64,000 bases of DNA from Macrostomum lignano (taxonomy: Eukaryota), in contig NIVC01000433.1 in NCBI GenBank assembly GCA_002269645.1, positions 136,873 through 200,872 on the forward strand. Direction: 5' to 3'. The notes beneath the pieces are model-generated. The model was not told the DNA's origin and did no database searches. It saw only the letters and a list, made by a program, of their open reading frames with translations. Each line of letters starts with the position of its first letter. The first letter of the stretch is position 1. A program made the translations under genes and the position numbers. This document shows positions 35,137 to 38,100 of the stretch, one piece after another.

Positions 35137-38100
35137 TCAAAGACGAGCTAAAGGCGTCATCATTTGCAGCAGCCAAAAGATTGCCATAATTTGCGCAACT
35201 TTCGCACTAGCAATGCAGCCCGCATTGACAGCCGCACCAGCGGATGAGGATTCTGGCTTGAATTGAAGCATTGATGCAGCTGGGTGCGATCGGATATTTC
35301 CTTCAGACAGCGCTGTCTCCCGGATTGAATCGTCTGAGGTTAGAGGTGGTAGAAAAAATATTTTTAAGGAATATGTTAGCTGTAATTTTTTTTAAAAATC
35401 TTTGTTTTAAAAACATAGATTCCTACGAGCGTAAAGTTTACTACGCTACATATCGGCTGTATAACAGGCTTTAGAGTTGGCAAATAAAGTAGCGCCTGAG
35501 TATAGCTTTGTAACGTTTATTGCTCTACATATCGGCTGAGTGTTAAACTTTAAGACATTCTTTAAGACATTGGCTTTCAAGAATAAATTTGTAAAGTGCA
35601 TTACGCTACATATCGGCTGAATGTTTAACTCTAGAATTTCGTTAAGAAATTCACTTCTAAGCATAACTTTACAAAGTGTGCTACGCTTACATATCGGCTG
35701 AGTGTTTAGCTCTAGAATTATCCTAAAGACATTTTGGCTTTGAAGTATAAACTTTAAAGTGTATTACGCTGCATATCGGCTTCATGTCCAGCCCGAATGT
35801 GATTAAGCTACAGGTTTCTAGTTTACCTGACGCGAATCGAAGTTTGCTCCTAGCAGCAACAACTCGAAATCGCCGGGACTCGCCGCTGACAGGCAGCAGG
35901 GGCGGCTGCTCCCCCTCCTGCGGCTTCGGCCAGCCCATCGCCCAAGACGTCTCGGCCAGAGCGGCCGAGAATGTCCGGCAGTGACCGCGGTAGCCAATCC
36001 GATAATCGCCGGGCCGCTGACCAGCCGGGATGTCCCAGCGGATCAAGGCGAAGCTCTGGAAGAAGTCGCCCTGCTGCCAGAGGAATCTGCGGCAAAGAGC
36101 ATAGGTTAGGGATGGAAGAAAGTGGGTCAGTGATGGATACGGTGGGTCAGTGATGGAGACGGTGGGTCATTGATGGAAATGGTGGGTCATTGACAGAGAC
36201 GGTGGGTCAGTGATGGAGACGGTGGGTCAGTGATGGAGACGGTGGGTCAAGATGGAGAACGTGGGTCAATCATGCAGCAGGTGGGTCAATGATGGAGCAG
36301 ATGGGTCAAGATGGAGAGGGTGGGTCAATGATACAGCAGGTGGGCCAATGATGGAGAAGGTGGGTCAATGATGGAGATCGTGGGTCAATGATGGAGAAAC
36401 TGGGTCAATGACACAGCAGGTGGTTCAAGATGGAGAATGTGGGTCAATGATAGAAAACTTGTGTCAAAGATTAAGAAGGTGGGTCAATGATTGATGGAGA
36501 AGGTGAGTCAGTGATGGAGAAAATGGGTCAATGATGGAGAAAGTGGGTCAATGATGGAGAAAGTGGGGTCAATGATGGAGAAAGTGGTTCAATGATGGAG
36601 AAGGTGTGTCAACGATTGATGGAGAATGTGTGTCAATGATGGAGAATAAAGTGGGTCAATGATGGAGAAAGTGGGGTCTAATGATGGAGAAAGTTGGTCA
36701 ATGATAGAGAAGGTAGGTCAATGATTGATGGAGAAGCTGTGTCAACGATTGATGGAGAATGTGTGTCAATGATGGAGAATAAAGTGGGTCAATGATGGAG
36801 AAAGTGGGTCAATGATGGAGAAAATGGGTCAATGATAGAGGTGGGTCAATGATGGAGAAAGTGGGTCAATGATGGAGAAAGTGGGTCAATGATGGAGAAA
36901 GTGGGTCAATGATGGAGAAAATGGGTCAATGATAGAGGTGGGTCAATGATGGAGAAAGTGGGTCAATGATGGAGAAAATGGGTCAATGATGGAGAAAATG
37001 GGTCAATGATAGAGGTGGGTCAATGATGGAGAAGGTCCGCAAAGCAGACCTGGTATCAAGGCTGGCATCATTTCTGACGGTCTCCCAGCGGTGCAGCCGG
37101 GTGTTGTAGCGCTGCACCAGCAGAAACGAGTGATTGCTGATTCCGAACGAGTGCCTCGGGTTGCAGGCCACGAATTTCAGTTCCACCGTGTCGCTAGGGA
37201 CCGCATAGTAAAACAAAAAAATGGATTCCGCAAAAATTTTGTTTGAGTCATGCCCGATTCCTCAGAGTCTCACCTGCTCATAGGAGTTTCTCAAATTCAG
37301 CAATTGCTGGCCGAAATTTTTACCAAATCCAGCAAAGTCCAAACCGTCGATTCCTTGGCCGTCGCCGCCGCCGCCGCCGGAAATTCCGTCTAATCGGTTG
37401 CTTTTGTCCAAATCCGACGGCGTCCGTTTTGGTTGGAAATTTCCGGAATTCTTTTGTCGTTTTGTCGTTAATAACGAGCGCAACATTCGACTGGCGTGCC
37501 AGGCGTAAAAATTCAGGGTGTGGGGCCCGAACAGGGTGGCGCCGGCTTCGTAGTAGCTGCCCTGGGGTGGGAAAACCGATACTAAATCTTCATTTTAGAA
37601 ATTTGCATTAATATTTGCATTAACTACTTACAGGTAATTTAATAGTAGTAGTATAACTTAGAAAGTTGCTTCATATTTCTTTAGTTCTAGGCAAAAATTG
37701 GTTCGAGAGTCGTTAACAATATGAGAGGCGCCTAAATTGGGCTGGGTAAGAGGCGTCAGTATTGGGGTGTAAGAGGCGCCAATAATGAGTGAGTGAGAGG
37801 CGCCAATAATGAGTGAGTGAGAGGCCCCAATAATGAGTGAGTGAGAGGCGCCAATAATGGGTGAGTGAGAGGCTCCAATAATGAGTGGGTGAGAGGCCCC
37901 AATAATGAGTGGGTGAGAGGCGCCAATAATGGCTGGGTGAGAGGCGCCAATAATGAGTGGGTGAGAGGCGCCAATAATGAGTGAGTTAGAGGCGTCAATA
38001 ATGGGTGGGTGAGAGGCGCCAATAATGAGTGGGGTGAGAGGCGCCAATTCCGGTTAACAGCAAGTCCATCAATCTTATATTAGCAAATATTTATCACAAA

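What the first reader, a model, noticed from the sequence alone, without database searches (positions are those of the whole stretch)
35137..35333. Neutral ceramidase with a signal peptide and an extra terminal exon encoding a GPI-anchor-like signal
Seen: exon 1 encodes MALILMIAFCILSTISAVQG directly before the first catalytic-domain strand, with no mucin stalk. After the family's usual end (SRRFRV), a phase-matched intron (35826-35334) adds a polar linker and ...KPESSSAGAAVNAGCIASAKVAQIMAIFWLLQMMTPLARL*. This gives small-residue omega candidates (N-A-G, 29 aa from the end), a short spacer and a hydrophobic tail. Known: characterised neutral ceramidases are type II membrane proteins (vertebrates) or secreted (Drosophila, bacteria). 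Inference: a GPI-anchored, raft-targeted ecto-ceramidase, a topology I do not know to be described for this family. The Zn-ligand and catalytic motifs (THTH, NR, VH, GDVSPN, PTE, Tyr pair) are intact.
Basis: partly seen in the sequence, partly recalled or inferred. Interest (0 to 1): 0.8.

Follow-up and report, generated by a model that had tools for sequence, protein, structure and literature searches.

The report
Flatworm ceramidase with GPI-like tail exon
A lipid-degrading enzyme gene (neutral ceramidase) of the flatworm Macrostomum lignano carries an extra last exon that looks like a signal for a lipid (GPI) membrane anchor at the tail end. That would be a different way of tethering this enzyme from the one vertebrates use, but it is a sequence-based prediction on an already annotated gene.

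Summary
The window is the last 64 kb of Macrostomum lignano contig NIVC01000433.1. The gene is BOX15_Mlig025933g3 (PAA83118.1), a 13-exon neutral ceramidase on the minus strand.

Evidence that the tail is a C-terminal anchor signal:
- It lies outside both Pfam domains and outside the confident AlphaFold2 fold. It is a disordered linker of about 45 aa followed by a terminal helix.
- It has small-residue omega candidates (N807-A-G), and its marginally hydrophobic end lies within the range of classic GPI signals.
- A 56-58%-identical paralogue (Mlig009244) has the same extra phase-1 exon. Its sequence is unrelated but its architecture is the same.
- Similar tails, each paired with a short N-terminal signal, occur in ceramidases of Owenia fusiformis and Ptychodera flava, where they are contiguous with the last exon. 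Only 7 of 265 family members surveyed have such a tail.

I found no paper describing a GPI-anchored neutral ceramidase.

Caveats:
- No GPI or signal-peptide predictor could be run, and there is no biochemical test. A type I transmembrane anchor remains possible.
- This window's copy has a 2-bp deletion at the start of exon 11. With canonical splicing it frameshifts before the tail.

Verdict: a new variant of a known kind, of moderate interest.

The parts
35137..46306 (-). Whole CDS of the neutral ceramidase gene BOX15_Mlig025933g3 (PAA83118.1, 835 aa). It has 13 exons: 46306-46160, 43800-43660, 42623-42447, 41383-41256, 40854-40494, 40278-40189, 39747-39403, 38433-38296, 38219-38130, 37561-37274, 37193-37050, 36086-35827, 35333-35137.
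   Evidence: tblastn and splice-site mapping. The window is 100% identical to NIVC01000433.1. PF04734 scores 7e-144 and PF17048 scores 8e-25.
46217..46306 (-). N-terminal signal-like peptide, MQTIWHWKLPMALILMIAFCILSTISAVQG, residues 1-30. It is followed directly by the first catalytic-domain strand, FEVGAAMM.
   Evidence: AF2 predicts helix 8-24 and then strand 32-39. V at -3 and G at -1 fit the cleavage rule; cleavage itself is inferred.
37193..37274 (-). Intron 10 and the exon 10/11 junction. This copy lacks the GG that begins exon 11 in copies g2 and g4 (CCCTAG|GGCGAC versus CCCTAG|CGAC).
   Evidence: comparison of copies; canonical splicing gives a frameshift and a 676-aa product, the TG..TA junction reproduces PAA83118.1, and the GC-AG donor at 37278 gives an in-frame 833 aa.
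35827..36086 (-). Exon 12, the end of the Ig-like C-terminal domain. It includes the family's usual C-terminal strand, ...SGESRRFRVV, plus AARSKLRFAS. The donor is CAG|gtaaac, phase 1.
   Evidence: The last AF2 strand is at residues 757-760.
35334..35826 (-). Intron 12, 493 nt, GT-AG. It contains an ~81-nt tandem repeat. If the intron were retained, the ORF would add 30 aa (GKLETCSL...KPKCL*) with no hydrophobic tail.
   Evidence: It diverges by 18 substitutions in 493 nt plus indels between the near-identical gene copies.
35137..35333 (-). Exon 13, the extra terminal exon. It encodes residues 771-835 and the stop codon.
   Evidence: It is identical in copy g4 and differs by one substitution (A804T) in g2, which is 1 change in 197 nt. 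No Pfam family matches it.
35227..35333 (-). Polar, predicted-disordered linker or stalk, DDSIRETALSEGNIRSHPAASMLQFKPESSSAGAAV (residues 771-806). Together with AARSKLRFAS it makes about 45 aa.
   Evidence: AF2 pLDDT is below 50 for residues 768-820.
35218..35226 (-). Best omega-site candidate, N807-A808-G809 (omega, omega+1, omega+2), with 28 residues after omega. Other candidates are C-I-A and A-S-A, plus A-G-A and G-A-A inside SSSAGAA.
   Evidence: Rule-based scan. The geometry resembles DAF (S-G-T, 28 residues after omega) and PLAP (D-A-A, 29 residues); those control sequences were written from memory.
35140..35199 (-). C-terminal hydrophobic segment, VAQIMAIFWLLQMMTPLARL (residues 816-835), which runs to the C-terminus with no cytosolic tail.
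   Evidence: The best 11-mer has Kyte-Doolittle (KD) hydropathy 2.25 and the segment mean is 1.38. AF2 predicts a low-confidence helix at 811-834.

Best explanation
The Mlig025933 gene family of Macrostomum lignano encodes a catalytically competent neutral ceramidase. The window holds copy g3.

Proposed mechanism:
- The protein enters the ER through a short N-terminal signal peptide.
- It is tethered at its C-terminus rather than its N-terminus.
- The extra 13th exon supplies a flexible stalk of about 45 residues and a GPI-attachment signal.
- GPI transamidase would cleave near N807 and attach a GPI lipid. This would display the enzyme on the outer leaflet of the plasma membrane (plausibly gut or epidermal surface), where it hydrolyses ceramide to sphingosine and fatty acid.
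- Functionally, this C-terminal stalk plus anchor replaces the vertebrate N-terminal signal anchor plus mucin box.

Shown: the exon, its phase, its inclusion in the RNA-derived annotation, the conserved catalytic residues, conservation of the tail architecture in a deep paralogue, and recurrence in other invertebrates.

Inferred: signal-peptide cleavage, GPI addition, the omega site, the cellular location and the physiological role.

The g3 copy in this window may itself be defective or mis-assembled at exon 11. Copies g2 and g4 are intact.
For: Transcript support:
- The junction and tail are in the deposited protein PAA83118.1 and in copies g2 and g4.
- That annotation was built from StringTie/TACO RNA-seq assemblies plus TransDecoder (PMC5730564).

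Deep paralogue:
- Mlig009244g3 is 56-58% identical.
- It has a terminal intron in the same phase 1, 8-11 residues after RFRV.
- Its terminal exon encodes 64 aa (65 in the window gene). The sequence cannot be aligned, but the layout is the same: polar linker, SGSPAAAMTADAAS, then LLLTGTNFCFCMLLNYCFSIGL.

Position relative to the fold:
- The Pfam domains end before the tail.
- AF2 (pTM 0.86) ends the fold at residue 760, leaves 768-820 disordered and puts a helix at 811-834.

Signal properties:
- Omega candidates sit 23-33 residues from the end.
- Tail mean hydropathy is 1.1-1.5, within the range of CD59, PLAP, DAF and uPAR and below typical transmembrane values. The only residues after the hydrophobic core are 'RL'.

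Survey:
- Among 265 near-full-length homologues, only 7 proteins have such a tail: two Macrostomum loci, Owenia, and two in Ptychodera.
- All of them combine it with a short N-terminal signal and no mucin box.

Constraint:
- The tail exon shows 1 substitution in 197 nt between copies, against 18 in 493 nt for the adjacent intron (Fisher p = 0.02).

Catalytic residues are conserved against 4WGK.
Against: - No dedicated GPI or signal-peptide predictor could be run, and there are no experimental data.
- The spacer after N-A-G (CIASAK) is less polar than in textbook signals.
- The 18 residues between K815 and R834 could just about span a membrane as a transmembrane helix.
- Between Mlig009244 g2 and g3, all 3 amino-acid differences in 472 residues fall in the tail. 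This fits a loosely constrained signal, but it also fits relaxed constraint.
- The gene copies are too similar for a strong selection test.
- In the window copy, a 2-bp deletion at exon 11 puts the tail out of frame under canonical splicing.
- I did not see the RNA-seq reads themselves.
Confidence: 0.55

Rival explanations
1. The tail is a C-terminal transmembrane helix that is not cleaved. The enzyme would then be a type I single-pass membrane protein with essentially no cytosolic tail. It would still be a C-terminally tethered ecto-ceramidase, but not GPI-linked.
For: Residues V816-A833 (18 aa) are flanked by K815 and R834, and AF2 draws a helix at 811-834. A true transmembrane helix plus cytosolic tail does exist in this family, in a Roombia truncata fragment (P0226).
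Against: The segment contains two Gln, a Thr and a Pro, and its best 19-mer KD hydropathy is only 1.68. It must borrow the upstream AGCIASAK to reach that value. Only two residues follow it. The hydrophobic core is only 11-13 residues in the Owenia tail (ASILLCIFMLL-KQLI). The paralogue tail is interrupted by G, T, N, S and Y. This is the marginal hydrophobicity typical of GPI signals (established knowledge, not tested here).
Confidence: 0.22
2. The main product is a soluble, secreted ceramidase, as in Drosophila. The tail exon would then be a minor isoform or a C-terminal propeptide that is removed. Alternatively, retention of intron 12 would give ...RFASGKLETCSL...KPKCL*, so membrane anchoring would be marginal or absent.
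For: Secreted forms are the norm outside vertebrates. The third M. lignano paralogue (Mlig021249, P0003) has no hydrophobic tail. Intron 12 read-through stays open for 30 codons. The tail evolves fast.
Against: The deposited transcript-based models of all three Mlig025933 copies and of Mlig009244g3 use the spliced tail. Conservation of phase, length and hydrophobic architecture across 56-58%-identical paralogues is not expected for a dispensable appendage. A GPI signal is itself a removed propeptide, so this rival differs only in whether lipid is attached.
Confidence: 0.12
3. At this particular locus (copy g3), the gene is a recently disabled duplicate. The 2-bp deletion at exon 11 is real, canonical splicing yields a 676-aa truncated protein, and the tail exon is not translated here. 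The GenBank CDS would then be an artefact of projecting transcripts from copies g2 and g4 onto g3.
For: Copies g2 and g4 read CCCTAG|GGCGAC and the window reads CCCTAG|CGAC. PAA83118.1 requires a TG..TA intron. The annotation pipeline allowed multi-mapping of up to 1000 and BLAT projection of de novo transcripts, and the DV1 genome is highly redundant, with 180 Mb in blocks of at least 95% identity (PMC5730564).
Against: The deletion could equally be an assembly or polishing error in a GGG run. All other exons of g3 are intact, with only conservative differences. A GC-AG donor 4 nt upstream restores the frame. This rival concerns one copy only and does not affect what the gene family encodes.
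Confidence: 0.35

Closest known systems
Vertebrate neutral ceramidase ASAH2 (human structure 4WGK; rat and mouse brush-border enzyme)
   Same: It has the same two-domain fold, PF04734 plus PF17048, with E 4.6e-113 to 4WGK. All Zn-ligand and catalytic positions are conserved. Both are ecto-enzymes held at a membrane by a flexible stalk.
   Different: Vertebrates use an uncleaved N-terminal signal anchor plus an O-glycosylated mucin box, giving a type II topology (Tani 2003, cited in PMC6952831; sequences P0012 and P0129). The flatworm protein has a short N-terminal signal directly on the catalytic domain, and its stalk and hydrophobic signal are at the C-terminus on an extra exon.
Secreted neutral ceramidases (Drosophila CDase, Pseudomonas aeruginosa PaCD 2ZWS, and M. 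lignano Mlig021249)
   Same: They have an N-terminal signal peptide directly before the catalytic domain, and the same catalytic core.
   Different: They end within about 0-25 residues of the conserved F-x-V strand and have no hydrophobic C-terminus. The window protein continues for 75 residues after that strand (76 by the motif count).
Unannotated neutral ceramidases of Owenia fusiformis (CAH1775301.1) and Ptychodera flava (P0364, P0371)
   Same: They combine a signal peptide, no mucin box, and a C-terminal polar linker with a small-residue patch and a short hydrophobic end.
   Different: Their tails are contiguous with the last canonical exon, with no extra intron. The Owenia protein (P0174) is only 34% identical to the flatworm protein, no closer than other family members; Ptychodera identity to the flatworm protein was not measured. 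The tail sequences are not alignable, so these are probably independent gains.
GPI-anchored ectoenzymes in general (e.g. alkaline phosphatase, 5'-nucleotidase, SMPDL3B)
   Same: They share the predicted biogenesis logic: an N-terminal signal, then a C-terminal omega site, spacer and hydrophobic propeptide. The hydropathy and geometry are comparable (control sequences written from memory).
   Different: They belong to different enzyme families. Anchoring is proven biochemically for those proteins and only predicted here.

Membership tests
Neutral/alkaline non-lysosomal ceramidase (ASAH2 family) | N-terminal catalytic domain PF04734 scoring above the gathering threshold | tested here: met
   480.6 bits (cut-off 32.1), residues 31-558, profile positions 1-507 of 509.
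Neutral/alkaline non-lysosomal ceramidase (ASAH2 family) | C-terminal Ig-like domain PF17048 | tested here: met
   87.9 bits (cut-off 30.5). AF2 shows a confident beta-sandwich at residues 632-760.
Neutral/alkaline non-lysosomal ceramidase (ASAH2 family) | Zn ligands (human H194, H303, E540, Y579) and catalytic residues (H196, R257, S354, Y591) | tested here: met
   The alignment to 4WGK gives H120, H230, E494, Y531 and H122, R183, S286, Y543. The human residue roles are from my memory of the 4WGK paper.
Neutral/alkaline non-lysosomal ceramidase (ASAH2 family) | Ceramide hydrolysis at neutral pH | not testable with these tools
   This needs an enzyme assay.
GPI-anchored protein | N-terminal ER signal peptide | tested here: met
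   The N-terminus has a hydrophobic core LPMALILMIAFCIL followed by STISAVQG, with V at -3 and G at -1, directly before the catalytic domain. This was judged by rule only; SignalP was not available, and cleavage is inferred.
GPI-anchored protein | Omega site with small residues at omega and omega+2, about 17-33 residues from the C-terminus | tested here: met
   N807-A-G with 28 residues after omega, plus four alternatives. The paralogue has D-A-A, A-A-S and A-S-T.
GPI-anchored protein | Moderately polar spacer of about 6-10 residues after omega+2 | tested here: inconclusive
   The spacer CIASAK(VAQ) has mean KD hydropathy +0.98, which is less polar than most control spacers (-1.0 to +0.2).
GPI-anchored protein | Hydrophobic C-terminal segment of about 10-20 residues that reaches the C-terminus, with no cytosolic domain | tested here: met
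   VAQIMAIFWLLQMMTPLARL: best 11-mer KD 2.25, only 'RL' after the core. The same holds in the paralogue.
GPI-anchored protein | Flexible linker upstream of omega | tested here: met
   AF2 pLDDT is below 50 for residues 768-820.
GPI-anchored protein | Positive call by a trained predictor (NetGPI, PredGPI or big-PI) | not testable with these tools
   No such predictor was available offline.
GPI-anchored protein | Release by PI-PLC or detection of the lipid moiety | not testable with these tools
   This needs an experiment.
Vertebrate-type type II membrane ASAH2 | N-terminal signal anchor followed by a Ser/Thr/Pro-rich mucin box before the catalytic domain | tested here: not met
   The catalytic domain starts at residue 31. 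Compare P0012 and P0129, which have about 100 N-terminal residues including a transmembrane segment and mucin box.
Type I single-pass membrane protein | About 20 or more hydrophobic residues followed by a cytosolic segment, usually with basic residues | tested here: inconclusive
   There are 18 residues between K815 and R834, including 2 Gln, and only 2 residues after them. Contrast Roombia P0226, with ...VVVVAAAVVAIRRHRRAHADPL....

The most novel reading that the evidence does not exclude
Invertebrate neutral ceramidases have repeatedly and independently swapped the way they are tethered to the cell surface. Macrostomum did so by gaining a terminal exon. Owenia and Ptychodera did so by extending the last exon. 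In each case the enzyme acquired a C-terminal stalk plus a GPI signal, doing the job that the N-terminal signal anchor plus mucin box does in vertebrates. That would make GPI-anchored ecto-ceramidase an undescribed, convergent topology class for this enzyme family.
Probability: 0.45. Interest if true: 0.5.

Novelty: new variant of a known kind. Interest (0 to 1): 0.38.

Why it matters
Neutral ceramidase controls ceramide, sphingosine and S1P levels at cell surfaces and digests dietary sphingolipids in the gut. How the enzyme is held at the membrane determines which ceramide pool it sees and whether it can be shed.

A GPI-anchored form would be a third topology for the family, besides type II and secreted. 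It would place the enzyme in the outer leaflet through a lipid anchor and make it releasable by phospholipases. It would also be an example of convergent re-engineering of membrane tethering, including by exon gain.

M. lignano is transgenic-tractable, so the prediction is directly testable. The impact is limited for three reasons. GPI anchoring of hydrolases is common, the catalytic biology is unchanged, and the protein sequence is already public.

Tried and rejected
- A profile search with a two-sequence alignment of the C-terminal 200 aa returned nothing at E <= 0.001, not even the source proteins.
- A phmmer search of 1.84 billion representatives with the C-terminal 200 aa matched only the Ig-like part (query positions 1 to about 90). 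No protein matched the tail by sequence, so tail homology cannot be traced by sequence, and I surveyed by architecture instead.
- No other Macrostomum species' orthologues appeared in any search, so there is no between-species dN/dS.
- The three near-identical copies give only a weak constraint signal (1 substitution in 197 nt versus 18 in 493 nt, p = 0.02).
- Literature searches for a GPI-anchored neutral ceramidase, for 'Macrostomum lignano' plus ceramidase, and for Mlig025933 found nothing relevant. The Trichoplusia brush-border proteome lists a neutral ceramidase with 1 transmembrane segment and no GPI.
- I considered and rejected the idea that exon 13 belongs to the downstream 569-aa gene or is non-coding. 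It is phase-matched, open, present in all deposited models, and mirrored in the paralogue.
- No other ORF of note on either strand and no Rfam family overlaps the region.
- The first attempt to collect the AF2 job failed; the second succeeded.
- The positive-control GPI signals were written from memory and may contain small errors. They serve only as a rough scale.
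Full report
**Identity of the locus.** The window is eukaryotic. Over 47500-33000 it is 100% identical to Macrostomum lignano assembly Mlig_3_7, contig NIVC01000433.1. Window position p corresponds to record position p + 136872, so the window is the last 64 kb of that contig. 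The gene is on the minus strand and is BOX15_Mlig025933g3. Its deposited product is PAA83118.1 (P0122, 835 aa). GenBank names it 'hypothetical protein' and UniRef names it 'Neutral ceramidase'.

**Check of the observation.** Six-frame translation and tblastn with the deposited protein map 13 exons from 46306 to 35137.
- Exon 12 (36086-35827) ends ...SGESRRFRVVAARSKLRFAS, with donor CAG|gtaaac in phase 1.
- Intron 12 is 35826-35334, with acceptor ...aacctcag.
- Exon 13 (35333-35137) completes D771 and adds DSIRETALSEGNIRSHPAASMLQFKPESSSAGAAVNAGCIASAKVAQIMAIFWLLQMMTPLARL and a stop.

Exon 1 encodes a signal-like peptide that abuts the catalytic domain, and Pfam PF04734 starts at residue 31. There is therefore no N-terminal mucin stalk, unlike vertebrate sequences such as P0012 and P0129.

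**Family membership.**
- PF04734 scores 480.6 bits and PF17048 scores 87.9 bits.
- phmmer against the PDB gives human neutral ceramidase 4WGK at 4.6e-113 and Pseudomonas 2ZWS at 9.5e-79.
- In that alignment THTH (H120, H122), NR (R183), VH (H230), GDVSPN (S286), PTE (E494) and the Tyr pair (Y531, Y543) coincide with the human Zn-ligand and catalytic positions. The residue roles are from my memory of the 4WGK paper.

**Is the extra exon real?**
1. The deposited proteins of all three near-identical copies (g2, g3, g4) contain it. The NIVC01 annotation was derived from RNA-seq (STAR, StringTie, TACO), mapped de novo transcripts and TransDecoder, not from ab initio prediction (PMC5730564). I did not see the reads themselves.
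2. A deep paralogue, Mlig009244g3 (P0125, 779 aa, 56-58% identical; locus L002), has the same 13-exon layout.
   - Its terminal intron is in the same phase 1, 8 residues after RFRV (11 in the window gene).
   - Its terminal exon encodes 64 aa: GKSLMEEPGWAQRDSNLQLSLSGSPAAAMTADAASTLRFWPSLLLTGTNFCFCMLLNYCFSIGL*.
   - The Ig-like domains of the two proteins align at about 50% identity, but the tails do not align. Length and layout are the same: polar linker, small-residue patch, hydrophobic end. That is what is expected of a signal defined by physicochemical pattern.
3. A 65-codon open frame in phase has a chance probability of about 0.044 per gene.
4. Between copies, the tail exon has 1 substitution in 197 nt. 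Intron 12 has 18 in 493 nt plus large indels, and the 3' flank has 7 in 299 nt (Fisher p = 0.02 and 0.04). This is weak but in the right direction.

**What the tail looks like.**
- Pfam finds nothing in it.
- An AlphaFold2 model built on an 80-sequence alignment (mean pLDDT 82.5, pTM 0.86) is confident for the ceramidase body. It ends the fold with a strand at 757-760 (FRVV), gives pLDDT below 50 for 768-820, and draws a low-confidence helix at 811-834. The exon therefore adds a disordered stalk and a terminal hydrophobic helix, not a domain.
- A rule-based scan finds omega candidates N-A-G (28 residues after omega), C-I-A, A-S-A and others. The tail's mean hydropathy is 1.1-1.5.
- The paralogue gives D-A-A, A-A-S and A-S-T, with tail means of 1.2-1.5.
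- Classic GPI signals that I wrote from memory (CD59, PLAP, DAF, Thy-1, uPAR and others) fall in the same range, at 0.9-2.6, with 24-31 residues after omega.
- The hydrophobic core is short (IMAIFWLLQMM), it is interrupted by Gln, Thr and Pro, and only 'RL' follows it. This favours a GPI signal over a stable transmembrane helix but does not exclude one.
- No trained predictor could be run.

**Survey of the family.** I classified the C-termini of 265 near-full-length homologues gathered in three searches (analyses). In 185 of the 241 with a recognisable end motif, the protein stops within 10 residues of the conserved F-x-V strand. Only 7 proteins combine an extension of at least 25 aa with a hydrophobic 11-mer (KD >= 1.8) in the last 20 residues:
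- Mlig025933 g2, g3 and g4.
- Mlig009244g3.
- Owenia fusiformis CAH1775301.1 (P0174; ...NANKDAEKSGTKEEPGTKAPMSLKPVTGGLEGNSGVRHGASILLCIFMLLKQLI).
- Two Ptychodera flava proteins: P0364 (...IGSTVPTETVPPDSAPGMLHGNGIIISLMTVIAAMVSNTLFK) and P0371 (...VSGSAGVLVANGTATLLGIMGLLLYCMIQ).

All five loci also have a short N-terminal signal directly before the catalytic domain. In Owenia and Ptychodera the tail is contiguous with the last exon. The Owenia protein is only 34% identical to the flatworm protein. These therefore look like independent gains, and only Macrostomum uses an added exon. A Roombia truncata fragment (P0226) carries a genuine transmembrane segment plus a basic cytosolic tail. The third M. 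lignano paralogue (Mlig021249, P0003) has no hydrophobic tail and is presumably secreted.

**A problem in this particular copy.** Copies g2 and g4 read ...CCCTAG|GGCGACACGG at the intron 10/exon 11 boundary. The window reads ...CCCTAG|CGACACGG, a 2-bp deletion. Three readings follow:
- With the canonical junction (37274|37193) the ORF shifts frame and stops after 676 aa, before the Ig-like domain and the tail.
- PAA83118.1 can be reproduced from the window only with a non-canonical TG..TA intron (37273|37194).
- A GC-AG donor at 37278 would give an in-frame 833-aa protein (...NSYDDTVELKF...).

Family conservation of Y-x-x-G-D/E-T/S-V supports the g2/g4 reading. The cause could be an assembly or polishing error in a GGG run. 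It could also be a real lesion in one of several redundant copies; the paper reports 180 Mb of blocks at least 95% identical. This cannot be decided here. It does not change what the gene family encodes, but it does mean the tail in this window may not be translated.

**Mechanism proposed.** A signal peptide takes the protein into the ER. GPI transamidase then cleaves at or near N807 and attaches GPI. The enzyme is displayed on the outer leaflet on a stalk of about 45 residues, where it hydrolyses ceramide. This mirrors the vertebrate arrangement, a type II protein with an N-terminal anchor and an O-glycosylated mucin box (Tani 2003, cited in PMC6952831), with the polarity reversed. C-terminal truncations of mammalian ASAH2 abolish folding and activity (Tani 2004, cited in the same review). 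This fits the flatworm protein keeping the conserved last strand intact and appending the stalk after it. My estimates are:
- about 0.55 for GPI anchoring;
- about 0.22 for an uncleaved transmembrane anchor;
- about 0.12 for a mainly soluble product;
- separately, about 0.35 that the g3 copy is truly frameshifted.

**Novelty.** Full-text searches found no description of a GPI-anchored neutral ceramidase and nothing on this gene. The sequence and exon are already public, and GPI anchoring of ectoenzymes is commonplace. This is therefore a new topological variant of a well-known enzyme family, recurrent in a few invertebrates. It is of moderate interest and easy to test.

Noticed in passing
window 37193-37274 (NIVC01000433.1:174065-174146): There is a 2-bp deletion (GG) at the first bases of exon 11 in this copy, relative to sister copies g2 and g4. 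Canonical splicing frameshifts the ORF to a 676-aa product. The GenBank CDS for PAA83118.1 implies a non-canonical TG..TA intron.
   Followed up: partly
L002 (NIVC01000927.1), L002:13168-13772: The paralogue Mlig009244g3 has its own unrelated 64-aa tail exon in the same phase. Between its copies g2 and g3, all 3 amino-acid differences in 472 residues lie in the tail.
   Followed up: yes
L005 (Owenia fusiformis), L006 and L007 (Ptychodera flava): Neutral ceramidases of an annelid and a hemichordate carry GPI-like C-terminal tails that are contiguous with the last exon. The source records give them no specific anchor annotation.
   Followed up: partly
P0226 (Roombia truncata transcript fragment): This is a neutral ceramidase C-terminal domain followed by a clear transmembrane helix and a basic cytosolic tail, which would be a type I membrane form in a protist.
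   Followed up: no
window 36111-37036, 37722-38048, 39780-40147, 41415-42417, 42733-43548, 45444-46139, 35525-35719: Almost every intron of the gene holds a minisatellite (periods 19-81 nt). One is a (TAAC)n microsatellite of about 250 copies in intron 3. Copy-number differences in these arrays account for most of the divergence between gene copies.
   Followed up: no
window ~34343 downward, minus strand: A same-strand neighbouring gene encoding a 569-aa product with no Pfam hit starts about 800 nt downstream of the ceramidase stop codon. A 20-nt G-rich minisatellite (34608-34894) lies between the two genes.
   Followed up: no
window 46276-46306: There are two in-frame candidate start codons 10 codons apart, MQTIWHWKLP-MALIL.... 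The choice changes the n-region of the signal peptide but not the mature protein.
   Followed up: no
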